A DNA stretch of 35,176 nt, taken from positions 136,174-171,349 of the forward strand of contig NW_005434667.1 of NCBI RefSeq assembly GCF_000315625.1, given 5' to 3'. This document shows positions 1,493 to 35,176 of this stretch, in pieces. The first letter of the stretch is position 1. Each line of letters begins with the position of its first letter. A model generated the notes under the pieces. The model saw only the letters and a program-made list of their open reading frames with translations, did no database searches and was not told where the DNA came from. A program made the translations under genes and the position numbers. The stretch comes from Guillardia theta CCMP2712 (Eukaryota > Protista > Cryptophyta).

Positions 1493-4400
1493 TCACTTCT
1501 TCTCTACCCCTTCCGCCTTGTCCAGCTGCTTCCAGTACCTGCCATGACGTCAGCCCAGCTCGACTCCAGCTGAGAGGCTCACGAGTCAATGTCATTGCGG
1601 GCTCCTGAGGCGGACATCCCGACGTAAACGCCCTTTCCCTTCTGTGCCAGCTCGAAGTCAGCTGGGAAATCGCAAGAAGCAGCTGCCTCGCCTTGTAGAA
1701 CCTCTCCGGCTCGTGTGCAGCACGTGCGGCAACCTTAGAGCCGGCCTGCTGCTTGTTGGAGAAGAAGTTCTCCCAGTTCAGCTCCCCGTCCTTGCCCGTG
1801 TGGGTGGTGTTGCTGCTGGGGAGGTGAGAACGGGTTGCGCGAGGGAGGTCGAGCCGGGAAAGGGCACCTGTCAACGTTGACCTGGTCCATGCTGTCGATC
1901 GTCTCATCTCCAAGGGAATGGTTGCTTGCAAGGATCGGAGTATGGGTGGTGTGCATCTGCAGCATTGTGTTCAGCTCCTCTTCATCCCTACTCCTCCGGC
2001 CTAACCTTGGGCTCAGCCTGGGGAGAGAAGAACTTGTTCCAACGGGGGGTGTCTTGAGCGAAGTCTTCACTGACCTTGACGACCTGGGACGCATGTCAAA
2101 CTCTTACAACGGTCACTTGACACTTCACGTCGTCCAGCAGCCCGTCCACGTCCTTCTCAGGTCTCAGCTTGTCGCGGATGATCCCACTAGAAACCGCTTG
2201 CTGAAACTTGCTCTGCCCAGCAGCGCGTCAGCACAACGAAGCACGTCTGCAGTCAGCGTGCTGCTCACCTGAAGCTTCGCCTTCCCCTGCACCTTCTTGA
2301 GCTCCTTGGAAGTCCTCAGCTTCACTGCGCTCGCCAGGCGATTCTTGCCGTTGACGGCCTTCGCCCAGGAATTCTCCGAGGTCACCTTGGAGACCGAAAC
2401 TCTTTCATCGTCTCCAAACATCTCCTGCAGCCCTCTCAGTCTTCCGCTCTCCCTCCTTCACACCCCTCACCTCGTCACCGAGATTCTTCTGCGCCAACAT
2501 GGTCGTCGGCGCCTTAGCAACCTGAACGTAGGGAGCGTAGCGAGGCTGATAACCTCCGTACACGACGTTGCCCATCATGTTTCGCAGCTGGTATGTGTTG
2601 CCCCGGTACATGTAAGGGACGATCTGCTCAGAAGGGAATACCACGTCCCCCTGGTTCTCTCCGTAGATGCGGTCTGGCAGGTCGATCACTTCGTCCCCGC
2701 AGAGGGTCCCGTTGCCGAGGCATGTGGGCGCAGGGCTGAGCGACGTGAAGTGCTCCTTCTCTGACCTCAGCGCCTGCATGGCGCGCTGCCTCTGCATCAT
2801 GAGCCCTCTAGCTGCCTGGTACCTCCTCAGCGCCTGCCAGCTCGTCAGATCCGCTGATTCACGGCAGCTGGTGGCTCAACCTGAAGAGCAACTGGAGGAG
2901 CCAAAGATCCAAGTCCCGGAAGGGGACGAGCACTGAAGGAGCAGTGAGTCTCTACTGTCGAGCATCTCCCTCCTCATCACCTCGGCACCATTCGGCGCTG
3001 ATTCATCAGGGCACTTGGCCGGGCAGACAGGAACGTGCCTCCTCGCATCTGACGAAAGATGGAGTTGGTGTTGCCGCTCCAGGGATCGTAGGTGGTCGGG
3101 TGGCTGGGACGTTCGAGGTCGAAGTCACGGCCGATGGTCTCCTCGCAGTCTCCTTCGTTCAAGTCTGGATGGCCAGCGCAGCCGTTGGGATCCGAGCAAC
3201 GGAACTTGCAAGGCTTCTTGGCTGCTTGCGCGACACTCTGCTCTCCCTTGACTTTGACACCGTTGGCGTAGTCGAAGTTGCCGCCCACTCCTGCTCCTGA
3301 CATCTCACCAGCGACAGGAACGTTCGCCCAGGGACCCTCGCCAAGGAAGCCGTTGCTCCATTCGAGCTGTTGAGACTTTGAGATAAGTCAGAAACATCAC
3401 GTGCATCATTCAGTCGCTACATTGACGACAGGGCGGAGGCCGGAGGGCTTCGCCTGTCTGAACATGTATTGGTTCAGAGCGTTGCCGGGCACCAGCACGT
3501 CTCCATCGTCGAACCCGCCCTGCGAGCTGCAACAGTGGCATCAGCGCCTCGTCTTCTAACCAGGATCATGTGAATAAGATCAATGCTACCTCGTGGCCGG
3601 AACGTCGAAGATCTCATCGGCGGGGATAGCCATCTTGTGCGAGGAGAGGTGCACCATGGGTGAATCCACCTGCTCAGCTTTCTTGGTTCCGATCTTGATC
3701 TGAAGTCTCGCCTGAAGACAAGGCAGGATAATGAGCTATTCCGGTGGCATAACAACGAGATCGCCTTGGCAGAGGGGAGGAGGAATGATGAGGACCAAAA
3801 GGAGCTTCACCTTGTCATGGGTCGAGCTCTTGGGTGCACGAGAGAGCTTCGGGGAGGGATCCTTGCTGCTCTGTGGCTTGTGCTTGAACATGTACTGGTT
3901 CAGAGCATCCCCAGGCACATGTACATCGCCATCGTCGAAGTGAACGTTGCTAACCAGAGAAGTCAGGAACACTGATCATCAGCACGATGAGATCTCACTC
4001 GTGCGTTGGTACATCGATGACATCCGTTCCAAGGTTCTTGACAGCCTTTGTGTCCTTCAAGGCAGATTGCACAGGAGCAGTTGACTTCACGGTCTGTTGT
4101 TGAGATCAACGAACCAGACATGATCGTGAGAGGGTGGAGTCATGGCACCTGGAGGCTCTTGGCATGAGCATGAGCATGAGCATGAGCATGAGCATCCTTG
4201 CTTGAGCTGGAGGAGCGCAATCAGCTTCCCGGGGTTCATAGCACTAGTGAGCACCTGCTAGCTGCGAGCTTGGTACCGTCCTTCTTCAGTTCAGAATGCG
4301 CTTCAACTTTCTGTTCAGCAACCTTGGCCGCATGGGCATGAGCAGCATGGGCGGGTGAGGCATGCCCAGCCAGCGCCTTCTTGTGGGACACGAGCTTGTG

Positions 4401-4689
4401 CACATTGGCTTGAGCTTCTGATTTGTGCGGAGCAAACAGCTCCTGATTAAGCTTGGCAAAATGATCCAACTCCTGGTCTGCAATCTGCAAGAAGCGCTCA
4501 GGGCAGGAGCCTCGCGCAACGATCCCTCACCCGTCTTGATATCTGATGCTGAAGATGCTGCTCTCGTTCTACTTGCGCGACAGAGAGCATAGAAACTCGT
4601 CCGTGTGAGTAGTAAACTCCAGCAACGGCAAGCACGACAGCACAGGCGAGTACCGCCATCACGCGGGAAGTCCGAGAGCTTCCCAACAT
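1493..4689 (-). CDS. Multi-exon secreted or type II membrane protein with internal repeats (D-[VI]-x-D-x-P...GDVxxPx...YM[FY]); probably lineage-specific
   Basis: N-terminal hydrophobic segment (VMAVLACAVVLAVAGVYY) from ATG 4689. About 15 short GT/GC-AG introns link ORF fragments 4498..4689, 4236..4490, 3736..3972, 2977..3303, 2405..2800, 2164..2421 and 1455..1931 in frame. Ends GMSASGARNDIDSYWKQLDKAEGVEKK* at 1493. Confidence 0.75.
4157..4195. repeat. (GCATGA)n hexamer repeat encoding AHAHAH in the minus-strand gene
   Basis: Direct tandem repeat inside a predicted exon. Confidence 0.85.
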
Positions 4690-22731: not shown

Positions 22732-25700
22732 TCATCGTGCATAGTCAGCGATGGCTCGTATCAGCTTCCTCCTCCTCCCCTGGCCGAGGCTGAGCATCGA
22801 CCGGCGAACAGCCAGCCATTCTTTCTGCACTCCCGCTCGCACGCCCTCCACCACCTTGGCCCCTAGAAGAAGAGAGTCAGGAGAAACCGCTCACTGCTGC
22901 CAACTTGACCGCTGGGTAGAGACGGCAAGGACGCCTCGTCGTCGTCTTCGATGACTGCAGGGCAAGTGAGAGGAGGGAGAGGGAGGAGAGTCAGGAGGAG
23001 AGTCAGGAGGAGGAGTGGGAGGAAGGGGAGGAGGAGGAGGAGGAGGAGGAGGAGGAGGAGGAGGAGGAGGAGAAGGACAAGGACAAGGAAGAGGGAGGGA
23101 GAGAAGGTCTTACCGTCCTGCTCTGCGCATCCTGACTGGACGTACATGTTCAAGGCCAGCAAGGCGCTCTCTTCCTGCACACGGCCGAGCAGACCAAAGG
23201 CAGCTTGTGCTACTTCTAGAGCTAGGTCGACGTTGACCTTCATCTGATGAAGAAGCTCAGGTGAACTCATATGAAAGCAGGAGGAGAAGGAGAAGTGGTG
23301 GTGGAGGAGGAGCAGGAAGCGGAGGAAGACGAGGAGACAGTCGAGAGGGAGCAGGTCGAGGAGTTAGAGGAGGTCAAGTAGGAGGGAGGGAACAACCTTC
23401 TCTTCGTTGGATCGGAGGATCGCTGAATGATATTCCAACTCTAGGGAGGAGGCTTCCACTGCCCCCGCGAGTTTTCCAACCTCCGGGAGCCCGAGCTGGA
23501 GCTCGAGGGAGGTAGGGATCTTACAAGAGCAGAGTCAACAACCATCGCTTCCTCTTCCTCTCTGTTCCCATCCCTTTGCTCCTTTCCTCGTCCTCCTCTC
23601 CTTTCCAACGCCTTCTCCGCCTCCCCTCCCTCTGCCCCTCTCACCTTGATTCTCCAGTTCATCTTACAGGTGCTCTTGCTCGCAAGCTTTCTCTGCGAAT
23701 CGCGAGGAGGAGGCACCTGCAAGAACCTCTCGTCCGCATATGGCAAAGCACAGATCTGCCAAGGAGTTATGCCGAAGAATTCATTCCTCCTCTTTTCCCT
23801 CCTCCTTGTGCTCGTCCTCTTCCTCTTCTTCCTCTCCCTCTTTCCGCCACTCTCCAATGATCCCTTTGTCCTTCTATCCTTGTTCTTCTTTCCATTTTCT
23901 CCTCCTCGCTCCATCATGCCCATCTTTCAACTCCCAACTTCCTTCAGGTTCTTCGCTCTCTGACTTCATACGTACAATTCTCCCTTCCTCCTTCTTCCCC
24001 CCTTGTCCTCCTTCCTGCCTCTCCTCCTCCTCCTCTCTTCACCATCTCCTTCAATCCCCGTACCTTGTACAAGCAGCTCTGCTCGTGGAAGCTGAGCGGG
24101 TCATCGGCTCTCCTCCAGTCGCTCTTCCATGCTCCGCAGCAGAAGCAGCAGCAACGGTCGTACGCGTCCTCGTCGGGCGAGAAGAACCAGCCGGCCCAGG
24201 CGAGTAACTCCGGGGAGAGGAAGGAAGGAGCAGAGAGGGTCTCACTATCTTCCTTCTTCCCCTGCTCGAATGATGATCAGAGTAGAGAGAGAAGGCGAGA
24301 GGCGGAAATGACGTCGAGGAAGAGCAGGAGCAGGAGCAAGTGGAAAGGACAGCCCGATGTGGAAGAGGAGGAGCAGGCATGAAGAAGGAGCAGGAGGAGC
24401 AGGCAGAAGCAGGGTGGAGGAGGCAGGAGAGGGAGGAGGAGGGAGGGAGGAGGAGAGGGGAGGAAAAAAGGACCTTATTGAGTTGGAACTTGTGCGCGGG
24501 CCATGTGCAAGTCAATCTCGGGTTGGAAGACATGGTCCAATAGATGTCGAAAGTTCTCTGGCGAGCGATTTGCAAGTCGATGTTGTTGAACAGGAGATCT
24601 GAAGAGAGCTTCAGATGTGAAAGAACAACTACTTGCAGGAAGATAATTCCATCCTTTCCTCTCCCCACCCATTCGCAATTCCATCCCACTATCCCCACCC
24701 CTCTCGTCCTCACCCTAGTCCTAGTGATCCTCTACCTGTTCCCCCCCTCCTCCCTCTAAACCTCGTCCTCGTCCTCGTCCTCGTCCTCGCCCTCGCCCTC
24801 GTCCTCGTCTCACCTGAGAGGACGCTTGCCGCCTGGTGACGAGACAAGAGGGCGCCATGATGCGCTTCCTTGGCCCTCGCCGCCTGCTCGTTGAGATGGA
24901 CATCCTTGAAAGTTGAGAATCAGAAGAAAGTTGAAAGAGAGGAAAACATGGGAGAAGATGAGAAGAAACAGAGTGCATGATGATGAGATGAGAAGGATAA
25001 GACATGCAGGGAAGGAGTAGGAGGAGGAGGAGGAGGAGTGGGAGTAGGAGGAGGAGGAGAGAGTGAACGAAGGGAAGGAGGTGCAGGCAGGCAGGTGGTG
25101 GAGGAGGAAGAGGAGTAATCAGGAGGGTACGAAGGAGGACTAGGTGTCTTGAAGGATACCTCTTCGCCCGGGGAGATAGTGCTGGACAGCAGCTTCAAGA
25201 GCTGCTCGTGTAGAAAACCTTCCTTCTCTCTCTTGACTGCTCTCATGACAGCTGCTGCAACCTCTGCATTTCTTGATGGACCTGCGGGTAGAGGGAGTGT
25301 CAACTGTCTCCTGTTGTGGTCTGACAGCAGAACAGCAGGAAACAAAGAAGCAAGTAGCTGTGTTATCCCCCTCGTAACCCTCTCCTCCTCCTCCTCCTCC
25401 TCCTCCTCCTCCTCCTCCTCCTCCTCCTCCTCTCTGTTATCACGGACCCTGCCAACACTTCCTCCTCTTCCTCTTCCTCTTCCTCTTCCTCTTCCTCTTC
25501 CTCTCCCTAGAAGGATCAAGTACCTAGCATGGAAATGGCTTTCACGCAGCTTGCTCTGACGAGAGGGGAAGGGTCCTGACAGCAGACTGAGCAAGACAGG
25601 GGGAGAGAGAAAATTCTTTCTCCTCACCTGCAGGAGCAACTCGCAGAGGTGATGGAGGACAACGACACTTCCTCTGCTCCACCTCCCCTTGCCGCTCGGA

Positions 25701-28700
25701 TACTGCGATATGTTGCCCAGCGCCTGGCATGCGGTCGATCGGACCTGCTCGTGCGGATCTTGTAGAGCAGCGACGACCTGAGAGGAGTTTGAGAGAGCAG
25801 GAGGGATGGAAGAAGGAAAGGGTGGGAAGGGAGAGAGTGGAGGGAACGGAAGGGAGGGAGGGAGGGAGGGGGCAAGGAAGAAGGGGAGGGAGGGAGGAGG
25901 GAGGGAAGGAGGGAGTAGGAGAGGAGAGGGAGCATGACCGCATCGAAGATTTCGTCGTCACTCTCTAGGGAGGCAGACATCCACGCGTGGTCGAAGAAAT
26001 CCTCCGCCTGCCACCAGCGTCACCAGGCAGCAGCAGCAGCACGGCAGGTCGTTCCTCCTCCCGGCTGACGCAGAGGATGGGAATAGTCTCGGTGCTCTGC
26101 ACCACTGAGAACCTCCCCTGGAAGCTCTCCTCCTCCAGCGAGATCAGCACGACTCCTCTTGCCTTCTTCCTTTTGGCCTTCGTGACGATCTGGCTGACCA
26201 GCTCCGCATCCGCATCCCTTGTCCTCTGACACAGCCACTCGTCACCAGCCCAGCAGCCATCACGTCAGCCTCCACGTCCTCTGTCTTCATCCTGCTTATC
26301 CTCCTCCCTCCTCCTGCTTCATGCTCCCTCCTAGTTACTCTCCCTCCTGTCTCCTCCCTACTCCCACCCGCCCCTTCCTCCTCCCTCCCTCCCATCCCCG
26401 TACGCTCCCCCTCCTCTCCTCTCACCAAGGCGACCACCGCGATTTTCCCTTGAAGCTCTTGATCCTGAAATGTGAGCAGCTCTAGAGCAGCAGAGACCTC
26501 CCCCAGCTGGAACCCAGCACTGTTCCACATGAGGCTGCTATCCCAGACGTCCTTCCCGCCCTTCCACGGCCTCTCGAACGGAGGACACCACAGGCAGCAA
26601 GTCACCAGCTCCCCCTCCAGTACCTCCCCAGGTGCGAGAGACCCCGAGCTCCTGCCAGCTGCAGCTCAGCTAGAGGGGCAAGAGGGGTGGCAGAAGAGGT
26701 AGGGAGAGGAGGGAAGGGAAGAGGGAGGGGAGGGGAAGGGAAGTGCGAGAAGGGAAGGGAGAGGACGGAGGAGAGGGGAAGGGCAGGAAAAGTGCTGAGA
26801 GGGAGGGAGGGAGTGGAGGGTTTGCCGTACCCGAGCTGGATGCCAGGGAGCCACGTGGCGTTCCATGCGAAGCAGTGCGAGAAGTAGGAGAAGCTGGCCA
26901 GCCGAGTCTCCTCCTCCATCTGCTCCAACAACTGCAGCTGCTCCCACCTGTGGGGGAGGAGGAACTCGAAGCCGCAAAGATCCTCCAGCTCGGAGAGGAA
27001 GCGGAAGAAGAAGAGCGTCTTCCCCCTCGCTCGGGGAGGGCGGGGGAGCAGGAGGGGAGGATGCCAGTCCCTCGGCCACTCCAACTGATCCTCTGAGGAG
27101 GAGACGAGAAGTTGGTCAACATCGCTGCTGGGCCCGCCCGAGGCCTCGAGCTCTAGAGCTCTGGTGAGGAGGAAGAGCCGGTGGCGCTGGCGCCTGACAC
27201 CCTGCCACGTCCTCTCGAGGTCTGCTAGAAGCCAGGCGAGGGAGAGCTGGGAAGACTCAATCTCTCTCTCCGTGACAGCCTTCCTCTTCAGCAGCCTCTT
27301 CATCTTCCTCTCCCACTCCTCTCCTCTCTCCTTCGCCACGTGCCGCTCCAGCTCCTCGTTCACCTCCTCCAGCTCCCCCGTGAGCTGAGAAATCGCCATC
27401 TTCTCTTCCTTGGCCCTCCTCTCGATGGACAGCGCGCACTTCCTGCCCGAGCTGAGAAGGATGGAAACTTTCCCCCTGCTCGCATGGCGGGGGAGAGACA
27501 GGAGCGCACGTTCCCTCACCTTCCTCCATTCACGGTCCGCCAGCTCCAAGTTGTTCTTCTCCAGGTACTGACCGGACCGCACCTGTCGGATCAGCTCCTC
27601 GACGGCGTCCCTGTCAGCAGGGAACCGCCTCCTGCTGTAGCCCTCCACTGCAAGGGCGCGGACCTCGGCATCCTGATCCGCACACCCCGACAGCAGCCCA
27701 GCTGCAGTCGCCTCCTCCCCGGTGCTCGAGAGCTCCGACAGGACGCGAACAGCCGCTTGCCTTACCCTCCAGCTGGGGTCGGCAGAGTCGAAGGAGTTCC
27801 CGTCCCCCTCCACTCCCAGGACGTTGAGGACGCCGACCGGCGAGGCAGCTCGCTCGCTGCTGTAGAGCTCCCTTAGCCTCCGCTCCTCGTCCTCGCAGGG
27901 AGGGGCAGGGGAGGAGATGGGGGCAGGGGGATCGGAGGAGAAGGCGACTTGGTGGATGAAGAGCAGGCCGCCGTCTCTGTCCTTGTAGGGGGCGCGGGAG
28001 AGAGGAGCATGCCACTGCTCTGGGCACGTCAGCTCCACCTCGGCCACCTCACAGAGTCCGACAGTTTCCAGCTGGAAATTTCGAAGGGAGAAGTCAAGCT
28101 TCGGCTTCACAAACTCCTTGCTCCTCCTCTGCTCCATCGGAACGATCCCTCCCTCCCTCCCTCCTCTTCCGGTCTCCCTTGCCCTCCTCCTCTCCTCCTC
28201 CTCCATCGCCATCTTCTCCTCCTCCACCGCGCTCTCGTACGCCACCAGCTCCTGCGACAGCCTGTGAAGCTCGTCCAGAGGCATCTCGCAGCTCCCTAGG
28301 AAGCGATGCTGGCGACTGACGTCCCAGTCCCAGAGCTCGAGGAGGAGAGAAGACAAGTAATTCTCCGTCCATGGCCGCTTCAAGGAATCTGAAGGCGACA
28401 AGCGCTCCAACGACAGCGAGACTGGGCTGAACTCGACCTCCTCCTCCTTCCTCCGCACCTCCGACGCGTACAGCACGCACGATGCTGCGCCTCCTCGGAT
28501 CACGAAGAACAAGTTCGCGCTGCCCCACTCGCTCGCCATGGTGCTGGAGAGGATCTTTCGGCATTGCACGAGTAGGCTGATCCTGGCTCCCCTCGCCTCT
28601 ATCCTGTGCTTGTCTACCCGCAGAAGCGCATGCGCAGGCACGTTCGCCTCCCCCACCAGCTCGGGAGGAAGCCGCTGGTTCGGCTGCTCCCAGCATCGGA

Positions 28701-31700
28701 CCCACAGCCTGTCTTCGAGCCCGTGGAGGAGGAGGGAGGAGTAGGAGACGTCGAGGGCATGTTCTGCTCTCACTCCTTCCTCCTCAACGTGGAGGTTGAC
28801 AAAGTTCTTGCGCTCGTGCCCCCTCTCAGCGATCCATCCAGTCCTGCCGACCTCCTCCCACGTCCAGATGAGAGGAGGATGCCACTGGTGCAGGTCCACC
28901 TGGAGGGGAGGGAGGCGGTTGAGTCGGCTAAGGGTAACGAACATGCGGGACAGGCAAGCCTGACCCCTGAACGAGGTCAAACTCTCTACTCCGATCCTGA
29001 TCCCTACCTGCAGGCGCCCCTCCTCCCTCGCCAGGAACTTGTGCAGCCTGTTGCTGGGGCAGAGGGAGGCGAGGCAATGCAGGGCCGCCGTTCGGACATG
29101 CTCGCTCTTGTCCTGGATAAGAGCTTGCAGGTCGGAGAGCAGCCACGAGGGAGAAAACTGAAACTTCTTGTGAAGGAGCTGGCATTGATGGACCGCGTCC
29201 TGTTTCACCGAAGATGATCTGTCGCGCAAGGCCCTCCTGAGGATCTGAAAGCTCGTTCGGAACTTGCACTGAAGACGATGGTGCGAGGAGACACTTGAGT
29301 CCGCCTCCTCCTCCTCCTCCTCCTCCTCCAAGTCCTTGTCAATGTCCATGTCGTTCCTCCGGACGCTGCAGAAAAATCTGTCGATGCTCCCGCTGCGGAA
29401 GAGAAACTCTAGCAGCCTGCCGTTGATCCTTAGCGCCATGATTCTCACAGACTCGTCGGAGCAACGGAAGCTCTGCAGGAGGGAGGATACAAGGCCCTTC
29501 CATACCAGCTGCACGCCAACAGTCCCTTCCTTCCCGTCGTACATCCGATCCCTGTTGTAGACGCACAGGTCGTTGAGCCCGGCAAGGCATGCTGCTTTCA
29601 CCACCTTCCACGGCAAGCTTTCACTCACCCTCCCCTCCTTCTCCACGTGCTGAAGGTAACGATCAACGACGTGCCGGAGGACGTGATGGTTCGGATTCAT
29701 GATCTTGATCAGCAACCTTGCTACCAGCCTCCTCATCTTAGCGCTGCAGCGCTTGAACTGACTGTACTCAAACTCCGCTGCTCCTCTTATCGCCGCCCGG
29801 ATGCACCCCTCTTCCACGCTGCTGCAGGGCAGCTGGAACAGGATCCCCCTGCTCTTCCCCGGGTCGACCCTCCCCCTCGGCTGGACGATACAGCTCTCCG
29901 CCCTCCACGTAGCCCGCATGTGCTCCACGTTTTCCTCCTCCATCTTCCCCTCCTGCTGCCTGCTCTGAAGGTCCCGGAGGAAGCGGTCGAGCCCCTTTTG
30001 CAGCAGGGAGTTCTCTGCGATGAGGAAGAAACTCTGTCCGAGGTCAGGAGGAGGTTGGAGAGGAGCGTTAAGAAACAGCCTCTTTCCTCTCGTCACCCGC
30101 AGACCCACCAGCGTGACTTTACAGCTCGACCCCCTCTTCCAACCCGCGGAGTCCATCTTAGAATACTCTATCGCAGCTTCGTCCTTCCTCCCGCCCCCCC
30201 CGTCCCTATCCTCCTCTCTCCCCTCGTGTATCTCCCTCCTCCTCCCTCCCTCCTCCTCTTCCTCCCTTCTCTTCTCCTCCCTCACGCTCTGATGCTGCTG
30301 CGATCTCCAGTCTCGGAAGACACGGTGCCGATGCTCCCAAGTCAGCTCCACGTCGTTCTCCAGCACCAGCACCACCTCCTCCTCCTTCCGCTCTCGCAGC
30401 AGAAACTCGGTGCTCAGCACGACGCCTCCCACGGGCTCCCAGCGCAAGGAGAGAGGAGGGTGCCAGGAGGAGCGATAGACGCGGTTCTTGACGTCGTACA
30501 TGGCTTCTCCGAGCTCAGCGCCTCCCCACGTGTAGAGCTGCATCAGGACGGGCGATTGGAGGCCCTGTGGTATTTCAGGGAAGGGGAGAAGGAGGAAGGA
30601 GATGAGAGGACGGCGTTGTAGGGGTCGTGAAGAGAGAGGTACAAGATGACAAGAACAAGGGGCACGAGCATGATAGGATGACGTAGAGGGAGAGGAGGAA
30701 GAGGGACAGACCTTCTCGTCACTCATCAGCTCTTGCAGCGGGAGGACAAGGTTGGAGAAGCGAGGGTGATACACGGCCCGTCCGATCGCCTCCTCCACCA
30801 CTCCTGTCTCGCTAGAGATGGTCAACTTAAACCCACGAGGGGCCCCTGCATGAAGATCCCGTCAAGACGCGGAAACGTCAAGTCCACAAACCGTTAAACA
30901 TGAGCCCCCTCCCTTCCTCCCCTCCCCTCCCCTCCCCTCCCCTCCCCCATCTTCACTCAGTCGAAGTCCAACTGACCTGTCTGCATCGGGTCATAATCCA
31001 TGACCTCGTCCTCCACCTTGACATCACAGCACAGGCTCTCCAAAGGCACATCGTCGACAATCTCCCGTGCTTGCGAGAAGACAGAGTTTGCCTTGGCGCA
31101 AGGCCCGAAATAATGTAGACCATCCCGCATCAACGCCGCTTCCTCCTCCTCGAGCGGGTTGGACAACAAGAGCATACAGTCCTTGCAGCTGTGCAGCTCC
31201 ACCCCCTCCACCTCGATGAACTCTTTCCTCAGCCTCCTCACAATTCTCCCTGCTCCGCATCATCACCCGCCCTCTCAGAACCTCCTCCTCCCTCCTTGCC
31301 TGTAGAAAGCTTCACGTCCACCTTGAGAAGCTCTCGGGTAAGTGCAGGAGGAACTTCATTTCCGCTCCCCTCATCTCGCAGGCAGGACCTGAGCAGGTCT
31401 ACCCTGTCTGCTATCCACATCTGCCCGCCAGTCAGGAGACGCTGCCAGCCAGCATCGCGCCCTCGACCTCCTCGCAACAGGAGCCTACGCGCAGGAGGAC
31501 TGAGAGGCGGAAGAGGACGTGGACGTCGGACCAGTCGCAGATGCTTGTGAGCACCTGCGATGAGGAACCGTCACCAGGAGCGAGAGGGGGGAGGGGGATT
31601 GGAATCAAGCAGAGGGAGGAAGGAAAGAGGGAGACCGGGAGAGGATGAGAGGAAGGGAGGGAATGAGCTGCAGAGGAGGAGGAGGAGGGAGAGAGGAGGA

Positions 31701-32015
31701 AGACGATGAGGACGAGAACGAGGTAAGAGGTGGAGCAAGAATTTGTGGAGCGAGCACCTCCAGGGCCTTCTCCGCCAGGCTGTGCTTTGCCTCGATCTTG
31801 TGGCCGAAGAAGTTTCGCTTCTCACCGAAGAAAGAGAGCAGAGCTTCCTTGGCCGTCTCATCGCCCCTCGGTCTCAGCCTGGCGAGAGCGAGTGAGGGAG
31901 CGTCAGCAGCTGCTCCTCCTACCTGCGGAGGGCCTCCAGCGCCGCGAACTTCACGGTGAAAGATTCCTCGTTTGTGAACAGACTGACACGACATGAGAAT
32001 AGCCGCAGGAAGAGA

Positions 32016-32090
<75 letters not shown>

Positions 32091-32101
32091 AGCAGGAGCA
32101 T

Positions 32102-32138
<37 letters not shown>

Positions 32139-32565
32139 GGCAGACTCACTCGCAGACGACGCGCACAACATCATGCAGGAGCCATGCATCGCGCTGCCAC
32201 TGGCGCAGCATGCCAGCTTCGCTCTCGACCATGCCATACCTGGAGGAGGAAGTCAGGTCGGCGTGGGAGCCATGGCGCTGCTCACTTGGCCCTGAAGTAT
32301 GTACCGCCTGCAGGGATGGAAGATGAGAGCTGCTCGATGACGAGCGTCTGCAGGATGAGGGGGTCAGCGGAGGAAGAGGAGGAGGAGGAGGAGGAGGAGG
32401 AGGAGGAGGAGGAGGAGGAGGAGGAGGAGGAGGAGGTGGTGGTGGTGGTGGTGGTGGTGGTGGTGATGATGATGATGAGGAGGAGGATGAGGAGGACGTA
32501 GTGGTGGTTGTGGTTGTTGAGGTAGTGTTGGATAGCTCTTGCCTTCTTGTCCGACGTCGTGGCAT
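22732..32565 (-). CDS. Very large multi-exon protein: HEAT repeats + copine-type C2 + coiled coil + PA-like domain + BIR zinc finger
   Basis: In-frame splice path from ATG 32565 (MPRRRTRR) through the 1407-aa ORF to about 22732. HEAT: DKSEHVRTAALHCL, DPSWRVRQAAVRVL, DPHEQVRSTACQALG, DPSPLVRASCVKAI. C2: LELWDWDVSRQHRFLGSCEMPLDEL. PA-like: LEGELV...LQGKIAVVAL..KARGVVLI..IPILC. BIR: RQRTF..WP..LSPELLAWAGWFF..DRCCCFCC-x16-H-x3-C. Start and last exon are uncertain. Confidence 0.75.
24064..24570 (-). other. BIR (baculovirus IAP repeat) domain split over two exons (24474-24631 and 24064-24261)
   Basis: ARQRTFDIYWTMSSNPRLTCTWPAHKFQLNK|GKKEDSETLSAPSFLSPELLAWAGWFFSPDEDAYDRCCCFCCGAWKSDWRRADDPLSFHEQSCLYK; both junctions of the second exon are phase-0 GT-AG. 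Confidence 0.85.
32017..32137. repeat. (GCAGGA)n intronic repeat
   Basis: Direct reading. Confidence 0.9.
32375..32495. repeat. (GGA)n(GGT)n(GAT)n compound repeat (poly-Pro/Ser in the N-terminus of the large gene, or intronic)
   Basis: Direct reading. Confidence 0.85.
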
Positions 32566-32627
32566 GCTCGAGCTGCGAGAGAAGCGAAGGAATGTTCATG
32601 GAGAAGAGACTGAGAGCATGAGAGAGA

Positions 32628-32987: not shown

Positions 32988-35176
32988 ATGTCGATGATGG
33001 AAGGGGTTCGCAGCAACACAGCATTGCTGCTGCTTCTCGCATGCCTCCCACTGACCTGCTCCTTCGCCCCTCCCTCCTCGCTCGGGATCCGCAAGGGAAA
33101 GTTGTTCAAGCATGAGGTGAGATTCAAGGTATGTTCATGAGAGTATCAACGTGTCTACAGGTATCAAGAAGGAAGAACCTTGCGTTGTCTTGCTCCTCCG
33201 TGGCTCAAGATCATGATTCCGTCATAGCCTCCGAGAGGGCGTACATAACAGGAGTGTTCCAACCGGCCTTGCTCAGCATCAAGAACGGGCGCATCGAGTC
33301 CATCAACAAGACTTCATGCTTGGAGATCGAGCGGCTGCGCAAGGCTGGTGCATCGGAGGGAACCCTCGTCCTCCAGCCCAACCAACTTCTTCTTCCCGCC
33401 ATGGTCAACGGGCACACTCACCTTGCCATGGGCGCCTTCCGCGGCATCACCGACGCTGAGTCGTTCAAGGGCAACGTGGTCGAGGATCTCTTCTTCAAGC
33501 TTGAGGGGTGAAGGAGGAAGAGGAGGAGAAGAAGGAGAAGGGGGAGAAGGAGGAGGAGGAGGAGGAGGAGGAGGAGGAGGAGGAGGAGGAGGAGGGCGTT
33601 GAAGCAAGAGCAGAAGGAGAGGACGAGGAAGAGGTGGTGGCGGTGGATGGGACTGAATCGTCCGCAGAGCTCTCACGGAGGACGACGTCCGAGCCTTCAC
33701 TCGCATGGGCTGCTGGGAAAGCATGCTGGCGGGTGTGGGAGCAGCGTGGGAGCACTACTACTTCGGGGAGGCGCTTGCTTCGTACGCCTGCTCTCCCTCC
33801 CTCCTTCCTCCTTACATGCTTGCAGAGCCTTTGCAGACACAGGGTTCAGTGGTGTGATAGCGCCGACAATACAGGCAAGCGTGAAGGAAAGGACGAGCAT
33901 GCAGCTGACTGTCCTGAAGGATCTCAGTGGTCCAGGGACTGTCTTGAAGGGATGCGACTGGGAGGCAGCCATCGAAACAACGATCAGAATGCACAGGGTA
34001 TGTCTGTCCTACATGTGCCCTTGCCCCCTGTCCTGCCTGTTGGTGTGCGTGCGAGGAGTTGTCGTTGCTGTGCGCTGGAAACCCTTGGGATGACCGGAAG
34101 GGGCAGGACGAGAGCTTACAGAGGAAGGGAATCTTCGCAGCCCTCGGTCCGCATGCTACCGATACCATCAGCCCGTCACTGTGGAGGAAGGTCTTTATGC
34201 TGCCAAATCCTCACCTGCCGACTTCTGACGCTGCGCAAGATCGCAAGCACCGCTCAGCAGGAGCAGCTCCCTATGCACTCGCACGTCGCACAGTCCATCG
34301 AGGTTGCCCTGCCACCTCCATGCTCCTGCTCCCTCCTTCAGCTCCCCTCCTCTTCTACCTCCCCTCCTCCTCCCAACTCCTCATCCTCCTTTTGATCCTC
34401 CTCCTCTTGCTCCTCCTCCTCCTCACCTCCTCCTCCTCCTCCTCACCTCCTCCTCCTCCTCCTCACCTCCTCCTCCTCCTCACCTCCTCCTCCTCCCTCC
34501 TCCTCATTCCCCATTACCACCTCTCCCCGAGCTCCCAGCTCCCAGCTCGACATTCCCTCGCGCTCTTCTTCGCTCACAGCCCCTCGTGCTCCAGGAGTAC
34601 AGGAGGTGCATCGATCGCCACGGGTGCTCCCCGTCAAGTTTCTGCAGCAGCAGGGGTCCTCGACGCAGATGTCTCCATGCTCCTCGTCCACAGCATGTTT
34701 GTCTCCTCCCGTGACCTCGCGTTCCTGGACCCAGGGAGGCACATGCTGGTGATGCGATCGTTAGCTCACGTCTGCCTGCTGCTTCTGAGCTCCTCCTCAG
34801 GGGCTCTGCCCTGCCTCTGCCGTACAGTTCGGCTTCCCCTGCAACTTTCAGGTCATAAGACGACAGGAGGAGTAGAAATGTGGAGGAGGTGGTGGAGAAA
34901 TATGAGGAGGAGGTGGTGGTGGTGGTAGAGGCGTGAAGTTGGGCCAGGCGTGGGATGCTGCTGGCTTCAAGATCGCCCTGGGGACAGACGCTGCCTGCTC
35001 CAACGACGGCATGAACGTGCAGCAGGAGATGAGGCTGCTAGCAGGAGGGGGCGTCTTCGGCGTCATGTCGTCCCCTGAGATGCAGAAGTTCGAGAAGAGG
35101 GAGGGAGGCGAGGAAAGCTGTCCAGCAGGCGCGTCAGCGGCTCTTCGATGGGAGCTCGATGAGCAGGTTGAACTCC
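32988..35176 (+). CDS. Plastid-targeted metal-dependent amidohydrolase (MTA/SAH deaminase / SsnA / ATZ-TRZ-like, COG0402), 3'-truncated, with apparent frameshifts near 34630-34656
   Basis: MSMMEGVRSNTALLLLLACLPLTCS-FAPP bipartite presequence. Motifs LLPAMVNGHTH, LGPHATDT, MHSHVAQS, LLVHSMFV, GLCPAS and IALGTDAACSNDGMNVQQEMR. Confidence 0.85.

What the first reader, a model, noticed from the sequence alone, without database searches (positions are those of the whole stretch)
22732..32565. BIR zinc finger inside a giant HEAT + C2 + PA scaffold: an IAP-like architecture I do not recognise, in an alga
Seen: a continuous in-frame splice path links several HEAT repeats, a C2 domain, a coiled coil, a PA-like domain, more HEAT repeats and a BIR (RxxTF..WP..LSPELLAxAGWFF..D.C.CxxC-x16-H-x3-C). 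The BIR core exon (24064-24261) is absent from the ORF track in this frame. Established: BIR domains occur in IAPs, survivin/Bir1 and BRUCE, usually alone or with RING, CARD, UBC or NACHT domains, and bind free N-terminal peptides (IBMs, histone H3pT3). Inference: a membrane-recruited (C2) solenoid scaffold that senses proteolytic neo-N-termini or acts in cytokinesis. It has no RING or UBC, so it may represent an undescribed algal BIR system. Its BIR is atypical, with an insertion after the WP motif and a short H-x3-C spacing.
Basis: partly seen in the sequence, partly recalled or inferred. Interest (0 to 1): 0.85.

Follow-up and report, generated by a model that had tools for sequence, protein, structure and literature searches.

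The report
Giant cryptophyte HEAT–C2–PA–BIR scaffold protein
This is a real 24-exon gene of the alga Guillardia theta for a 2,169-residue non-enzymatic scaffold that joins HEAT repeats, a C2 domain, a PA-like module and an unusual BIR zinc finger; relatives exist in unnamed, probably cryptophyte, microbes, its function is untested, and it is not a classical IAP.

Summary
The stretch is the annotated Guillardia theta gene GUITHDRAFT_101266 (XP_005839795.1, UniProt L1JXA1, "HEAT repeat-containing protein", 2,169 aa). It has 24 GT-AG exons on the minus strand, 32599..22732.

- **Domains:** HEAT and BIR pass Pfam thresholds. C2 and the PA-like core are sub-threshold in Pfam, but profile-profile comparison with G. 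theta's own C2 and PA domains supports both (about 94%, E about 1e-7; controls below 1%).
- **One gene:** One MMETSP transcript and uninterrupted ORFs on metagenome and Logan contigs are colinear with residues about 330-2169.
- **Likely taxon:** One relative's contig shares a linked GNL2 gene that is 89% identical to G. theta's, which points to a cryptophyte.
- **BIR:** It has the survivin-length GF..C loop and two insertions. It also has a family-wide 3-residue deletion giving H-x3-C, which removes part of the classical peptide pocket.
- **C2:** It keeps 2 of 5 calcium-binding Asp.
- **Absent:** No RING, UBC or CARD.
- **Unexplained:** A WH[PA]PL motif recurs five times.

The function (a membrane-associated adaptor) is inferred only. 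I rate it a new variant of a known kind, of moderate interest.

The parts
22732..32599 (-). Whole CDS of GUITHDRAFT_101266: 24 exons, 2,169 aa
   Evidence: The exon map reproduces P0001 exactly and every intron is GT-AG. Identity of the record.
26831..30564 (-). Giant exon 10 (aa 350-1594): beta-rich region, HEAT block 1, C2, HEAT block 2, helical segment
   Evidence: Colinear with the 1307-aa ORF of L017.
29041..29250 (-). HEAT block 1 (aa 788-857)
   Evidence: Pfam HEAT, Cnd1 and Adaptin_N hits. Translation checked.
28015..28572 (-). C2 domain (aa 1014-1199) with a charged inserted loop. It keeps 2 of the 5 Asp that are invariant in canonical C2 domains.
   Evidence: The ortholog passes Pfam C2. 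All 21 weak PDB profile hits are C2 domains. hhalign 94.2%, E 1.1e-7.
27628..27780 (-). HEAT block 2 (aa 1278-1328)
   Evidence: Pfam HEAT_2.
27142..27459 (-). Charged helical segment, a possible coiled coil (aa 1385-1490)
   Evidence: Crude heptad count only. Conserved in P0095, P0008 and P0063.
26070..26651 (-). Exons 11-12: PA-like module. The core is aa 1653-1721, split by an intron.
   Evidence: hhalign against G. theta PA domains: 94.6%, E 6.6e-8, with controls below 1%. Language-model lead. Pfam, PDB sequence search, AF2 and Foldseek gave nothing significant.
25160..26007 (-). Exons 13-16: HEAT block 3 (aa about 1735-1850)
   Evidence: Pfam HEAT and HEAT_2; best stretches 1741-1769 and 1738-1808.
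24474..24598 (-). Exon 18: N-terminal half of the BIR (AR.RTF .. W .. WP..KF)
   Evidence: Conserved in all homologs.
24064..24261 (-). Exon 19: BIR core, C-x2-C-x16-H-x3-C
   Evidence: Pfam BIR 34.6 bits. PDB profile hits.
22732..23755 (-). Exons 20-24: conserved C-terminal helical tail (VPPP, WR[IV][KR], terminal RR..IRAI)
   Evidence: Alignment A1. No Pfam family found.
30451..30465 (-). WHPPL motif 1
28870..28884 (-). WHPPL motif 2
28000..28014 (-). WHAPL motif 3, directly after the C2
27052..27066 (-). WHPPL motif 4
26839..26853 (-). Degenerate motif 5: WLPGI here, WRPPL in orthologs

Best explanation
Shown: this is one real gene. It encodes a large protein with no recognisable catalytic domain, no signal peptide evident by eye at the N-terminus, and a domain order conserved in relatives. 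The order is: beta-rich region, HEAT, C2, HEAT, charged helical segment, PA-like module, HEAT, BIR, conserved helical tail. Five WH[PA]PL motifs lie at conserved positions. The family occurs in G. theta and in unnamed relatives, at least one of them probably a cryptophyte.

Inferred: the protein works as a non-enzymatic adaptor. The HEAT solenoids form a platform. The C2 has an incomplete calcium site and would give calcium-independent membrane or protein docking. The C-terminal BIR plus helical tail would hold a partner. The BIR keeps its four zinc ligands, the groove Trp and the DDP acid that anchors a free amino terminus in other BIRs. It has lost half of the classical pocket, so its ligand is probably not a canonical IBM or H3T3ph peptide. 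It is not an E3-type IAP.
For: Gene and exon structure.

Domains: HEAT and BIR by Pfam; C2; PA-like.

One gene: the MMETSP transcript P0095 (1228 aa) runs from the end of the C2 to the C-terminus. The 1307-aa ORF of L017 covers HEAT1 to PA. The 698-aa ORF of L029 covers the C2 end to HEAT3. L020 is colinear and carries C2 and BIR Pfam hits. P0124 and P0123 cover residues 327-1020.

BIR traits are family-wide.

Cryptophyte origin of L017: its GNL2 fragment is 89% identical to a G. theta gene on the window's own contig, about 34 kb from this gene. By eye from the printed alignments, it is about 75% identical to human and yeast GNL2 (251.9 and 248.7 bits, against 304.8 bits for G. theta).

No paralog of the non-BIR parts in G. 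theta. No RING or UBC hit.
Against:
- Residues 1-326 have no homolog support.
- Both AlphaFold runs were poor (pLDDT 38-40), so no fold was verified.
- The PA support covers only about 68 core columns, and P0095 appears to lack the second half of that module.
- There are no binding, lipid, zinc or localisation data.
- The pocket-residue reasoning rests on alignments to cIAP1 and NAIP plus remembered structural roles.
Confidence: 0.55

Rival explanations
1. One reading: an IAP-like sensor whose BIR binds proteolytic neo-N-termini (IBM-like), recruited to membranes by the C2.
For: The BIR passes Pfam. The DDP acid and the groove Trp are invariant in the family. A C2 is present.
Against: The 3-residue H..C deletion falls on the 'KWF' of cIAP1 BIR3, which includes the pocket Trp (the role of that Trp is from memory). 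A conserved Lys/Arg replaces the pocket Leu. There is no RING, UBC or CARD. The C2 keeps 2 of 5 calcium ligands.
Confidence: 0.15
2. A Survivin- or Bir1-like mitotic protein: the BIR reads a chromatin or kinetochore mark and the C-terminal helices join a CPC-like complex.
For: The GF..C loop has the survivin length: the alignment to survivin is gapless over 47 residues. The BIR is followed by conserved helices.
Against: Komaki et al. 2022 (PMC9680938) found that Cryptista Survivin-type proteins are short and helix-only, without a BIR. This protein is 2,169 aa with a C2 and a PA-like module. The H..C loop is shortened. G. theta has at least 14 other BIR loci, five of them read here with canonical spacing.
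Confidence: 0.08
3. The BIR is a degenerate structural zinc knuckle that no longer binds peptides. The working parts are the HEAT, C2 and WH[PA]PL elements.
For: Two insertions and one deletion lie in the BIR. Its Pfam score is among the lowest of the G. theta BIR loci.
Against: The BIR core and its flanks are the best conserved part of the family: 18 invariant columns out of 72 across five lineages, including surface DDP and W.
Confidence: 0.15
4. The gene model is a chimera of two genes: a HEAT/C2 gene and a separate BIR gene.
For: No read evidence in G. theta. There are many short exons between 26.6 and 22.7 kb.
Against: A single MMETSP transcript and single ORFs in relatives bridge every junction from HEAT1 to the C-terminus. 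All introns are GT-AG and in phase.
Confidence: 0.04

Closest known systems
Survivin (BIRC5) / yeast Bir1
   Same: Single BIR of the survivin type with the same GF..C loop length, followed by C-terminal helices.
   Different: About 15 times larger than survivin. It adds HEAT, C2 and PA-like parts. The H..C loop is 3 residues shorter and the N-terminal half of the BIR carries two insertions. The reported Cryptista CPC Survivin-type proteins lack a BIR.
BIRC6 / BRUCE / Apollon
   Same: Giant protein built mainly of helical repeats and beta domains, with one BIR. The family BIR profile hits BIRC6 at E about 1e-6.
   Different: No UBC domain. The BIR is near the C-terminus, not the N-terminus. No sequence similarity outside the BIR in PDB searches. 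H-x3-C instead of H-x6-C.
Classical IAPs (XIAP, cIAP1/2, NAIP)
   Same: The BIR zinc-finger core is recognisably homologous.
   Different: No RING, CARD, UBA or NACHT. Three extra residues in the GF..C loop. Three residues are missing in the H..C loop, which forms part of the IBM pocket.
Other Guillardia theta BIR proteins
   Same: It belongs to an expanded BIR repertoire of at least 14 loci. At least one other ORF has a BIR next to a C2 (contig C275).
   Different: The five other G. theta BIRs read here have canonical H-x6-C. No paralog shares the non-BIR parts.

Membership tests
BIR domain (Pfam PF00653) | HMM score above the gathering threshold | tested here: met
   34.6 bits for the exon and 27.8 bits for the whole protein, against a cut-off of 22.9. 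Orthologs also pass.
BIR domain (Pfam PF00653) | Zinc ligands C-x2-C-x16-H-x6-C | tested here: inconclusive
   All four ligands are present and invariant, but the last spacing is x3 in every family member. Zinc binding was not tested.
BIR domain (Pfam PF00653) | N-terminal R-x-x-T/S-F .. W-P element and the BIR fold | tested here: inconclusive
   AR.RTF and WP are conserved but separated by insertions. The Pfam match covers only profile positions 18-61 of 70. The AlphaFold model was poor.
IAP (E3-type inhibitor of apoptosis) | BIR combined with RING, UBC, CARD or NACHT | tested here: not met
   No such Pfam hit in P0001 or its homologs.
BIRC6/BRUCE | C-terminal UBC domain, and homology outside the BIR | tested here: not met
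   No UBC hit. PDB searches of residues 1-1890 find no BIRC6 match.
Survivin/BORI (CPC subunit) | C-terminal helix that bundles with Borealin and INCENP | not testable with these tools
   No helix HMM was available. The literature reports helix-only homologs in Cryptista.
C2 domain (PF00168) | HMM or profile match to the C2 beta-sandwich | tested here: met
   P0001 E 0.03. Ortholog 25.5 bits against a cut-off of 22. hhalign 94.2%, E 1.1e-7, 87 columns.
C2 domain (PF00168) | Five Asp calcium ligands (calcium-dependent subclass) | tested here: not met
   Only the two loop-3 Asp (W-D-W-D) are kept, out of the five Asp that are invariant in G. theta C2 domains.
PA domain (PF02225) | HMM or profile match | tested here: inconclusive
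   No Pfam or PDB sequence hit. hhalign 94.6%, E 6.6e-8, but only over 68 core columns. The RG.C.F motif is absent. Foldseek found nothing significant.
HEAT repeats (PF02985/PF13646) | HMM score above the threshold | tested here: met
   75.6 and 73.4 bits.

The most novel reading that the evidence does not exclude
Cryptophytes have a BIR-based scaffolding or signalling toolkit separate from that of animals and fungi. In this family a re-tooled BIR recognises a new class of ligand: the pocket loop is shortened and a basic residue replaces the hydrophobic pocket residue. The five WH[PA]PL motifs would act as docking sites that assemble a membrane-associated complex.
Probability: 0.12. Interest if true: 0.75.

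Novelty: new variant of a known kind. Interest (0 to 1): 0.45.

Why it matters
BIR domains have been studied almost only in animals, fungi and their viruses. This is a conserved algal family in which a BIR sits at the end of a giant HEAT/C2/PA-like scaffold with no ubiquitin-ligase part, and its zinc-site spacing and peptide pocket are altered in every member. G. theta carries at least 14 BIR loci, so this gives a concrete case for asking what BIR domains do outside apoptosis and the chromosomal passenger complex. The shortened H-x3-C variant also tests how much of the BIR fold and groove is needed. It does not change current views until a ligand or a localisation is found.

Tried and rejected
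- **Run index:** probable RNA runs hold 0.2-0.67 of the sampled words, and the exonic fraction of that stretch is 0.605. This is a hint of expression, not proof.
- **AlphaFold, residues 1560-2169, single sequence:** pLDDT 39.6.
- **AlphaFold, residues 1512-1740, 5-sequence alignment:** pLDDT 37.9.
- **Foldseek on the second model:** nothing at E <= 1e-3. The weak rows include proteins I recall as carrying PA or PA-like domains: C5a peptidase, ZNRF3, an M28 peptidase and a TfR1 mimic. I do not count this as evidence.
- **Word-index searches:** no fragments of 181-577 aa for the BIR end and no named full-length relatives.
- **Atlas search on P0003:** uninformative, scores at or below 0.80.
- **PDB profile of the PA region:** nothing.
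- **Internal domain duplication around the WHPPL motifs:** rejected, since hhalign aligns only the 10-residue motif.
- **N-terminal 326 residues:** no homolog found. The upstream L017 ORF is mostly microsatellite translation.
- **L020 neighbour gene:** no match in G. theta, so the taxon of L020 and L029 is unresolved.
- **Joined exons:** I searched no exon model that I had joined myself. The only spliced sequence used in tools is the public record P0001, which a search returned. The script only checked that the exon coordinates reproduce that record.
Full report
**What the stretch is**

A word-index search with the 1407-aa minus-strand ORF returned one protein at 100% identity. This is GUITHDRAFT_101266 of Guillardia theta CCMP2712 (P0001, 2,169 aa; EKX52815.1 / XP_005839795.1; UniProt L1JXA1, "HEAT repeat-containing protein"). 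HEAT and BIR Pfam families were already precomputed for it.

A script mapped P0001 back onto the window. It found 24 exons, all with GT-AG introns, and a CDS from 32599 to 22732 on the minus strand.

I did not search any exon model that I had joined myself. The only spliced sequence given to tools is this public record.

**Domains**

- **HEAT:** 75.6 bits in three blocks, at residues about 788-857, 1278-1328 and 1735-1850.
- **BIR:** 34.6 bits for exon 19 alone and 27.8 bits in the whole protein, against a cut-off of 22.9.
- **C2:** only E 0.03 in G. theta. The orthologous segment on contig L020 passes Pfam (25.5 against 22 bits). A family profile finds only C2 domains among its 21 weak PDB hits. 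hhalign against seven canonical G. theta C2 domains gives 94.2%, E 1.1e-7 over 87 columns. In that alignment only two of the five Asp that are invariant in canonical C2 domains are kept, so a calcium switch is unlikely.
- **PA-like:**
  - Nothing came from Pfam, from a Pfam scan of the genome, or from PDB sequences.
  - A language-model search gave PA clusters for all 30 nearest named hits, at a score of 0.90.
  - hhalign against eight G. theta PA domains gives 94.6%, E 6.6e-8 over 68 core columns, with two controls at 0.4% and 0.04%.
  - The support covers the beta-alpha-beta core only, and the MMETSP homolog seems to lack the second half.
- **Coiled coil:** this rests on a crude heptad count.
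- **Not found:** RING, UBC, CARD or NACHT.

**One gene or two**

I sent those letters to no search tool afterwards, and I have no read evidence.

The comparative evidence is strong. An exhaustive HMMER search of 1.84 billion representatives found a small family: P0002-P0005, P0008, P0024 and P0063.

- One cluster contains an MMETSP transcript of 1228 aa (P0095). It is colinear with P0001 from the last strands of the C2 to the C-terminus.
- On contig L017 a single 1307-aa ORF covers HEAT1 to the PA region, and the next ORF carries HEAT3 and the BIR.
- On L029 a 698-aa ORF runs from the C2 into HEAT3.
- L020 shows the same order, with C2 and BIR Pfam hits.
- P0123 and P0124 cover residues 327-1020.

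Every junction from residue about 330 to the end is therefore bridged by an uninterrupted ORF or a transcript in a relative. Residues 1-326 have no such support.

**Who has it**

No named organism other than G. theta appeared.

The GNL2 GTPase fragment next to the gene on L017 is 89% identical to a G. theta gene on the window's own contig, about 34 kb away. By eye from the printed alignments, it is about 75% identical to human and yeast GNL2, with 251.9 and 248.7 bits against 304.8 bits for G. theta. This points to a cryptophyte relative with conserved linkage.

The scaffold itself is only 26-38% identical between lineages, so it evolves fast. G. theta has no paralog of the non-BIR parts.

**The BIR**

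- **Conserved across five lineages:** LAWAG, C-F-x-C, the groove W, DDP, H and C.
- **Relative to IAP-type BIRs** (NAIP, cIAP1 BIR3): the family has three extra residues in the GF..C loop and lacks three in the H..C loop, giving H-x3-C.
- **Relative to survivin:** the alignment is gapless through the His, so the loop length is survivin-type.
- **The missing residues:** they align to "KWF" of cIAP1 BIR3. From memory, that Trp lines the IBM pocket in XIAP and cIAP BIR3. A conserved Lys/Arg also replaces the pocket Leu.
- **The N-terminal half:** AR.RTF and WP..KF are conserved but separated by an 11-16 residue insertion. A variable acidic or Ser-rich insertion follows.
- **Other G. theta BIRs:** five others read here have canonical H-x6-C. 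The genome has at least 14 BIR loci.

**Other features**

A WH[PA]PL motif occurs four times, plus one degenerate copy, against 0.0008 expected from composition. It sits at positions conserved in orthologs. Only the motif aligns between copies, not its surroundings.

The tail after the BIR is conserved (VPPP, WR[IV][KR], a terminal basic helix) but matches no family.

**Interpretation**

The anatomy shows a conserved multi-domain protein with no recognisable catalytic domain. I infer an adaptor role. The C2 would dock, independently of calcium, on a membrane or a partner. The HEAT solenoids would form a platform. The BIR and tail would hold a ligand that is probably not a canonical IBM or H3T3ph peptide.

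It is not an E3-type IAP and not BRUCE-like outside the BIR. A CPC role is not favoured, because reported Cryptista Survivin-type proteins lack a BIR (PMC9680938). I found no paper on this gene. An earlier survey only lists another G. theta BIR protein (PMC5982838).

**Verdict**

This is a new variant of a known kind, of moderate interest.

Noticed in passing
G000 genome-wide; for example L001 = G000:C275:2728-5931: G. theta has at least 14 BIR-encoding loci. On contig C275 one 650-aa open frame carries a BIR (4228-4431) directly upstream of a C2 (3469-3738), so BIR and C2 are combined more than once in this genome.
   Followed up: partly
L017:12782-13701 and G000:C7:202674-203117: On the L017 metagenome contig a GNL2 (NGP1NT + MMR_HSR1) gene lies next to the scaffold gene. 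Its G. theta counterpart, 89% identical, lies on the same contig as the window, about 34 kb from this gene but in a different relative orientation.
   Followed up: partly
window 31919-32565 and 22863-23270, both strands: The introns and flanks are microsatellite-like. They give long open frames of poly-Leu, poly-Pro, poly-Ser, Arg/Ser and Glu runs in the mechanical ORF list. These are not genes.
   Followed up: no
window 33131-33511 (+): The neighbouring ORF carries an amidohydrolase-like N-terminal motif (..NGHTHLAMG..). It is probably the first exon of a separate gene upstream of the scaffold gene.
   Followed up: no
window 24425-24470: This intronic stretch tripped the read laying filter. 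The tool says this is no evidence of anything. I left it alone afterwards.
   Followed up: no
window 28100-28270 (aa about 1115-1170) and the equivalent in P0122: The C2 domain carries a charged helical insertion of about 60 residues between its late strands. It is present in G. theta and in the L017 lineage but absent in L020 and L029.
   Followed up: partly
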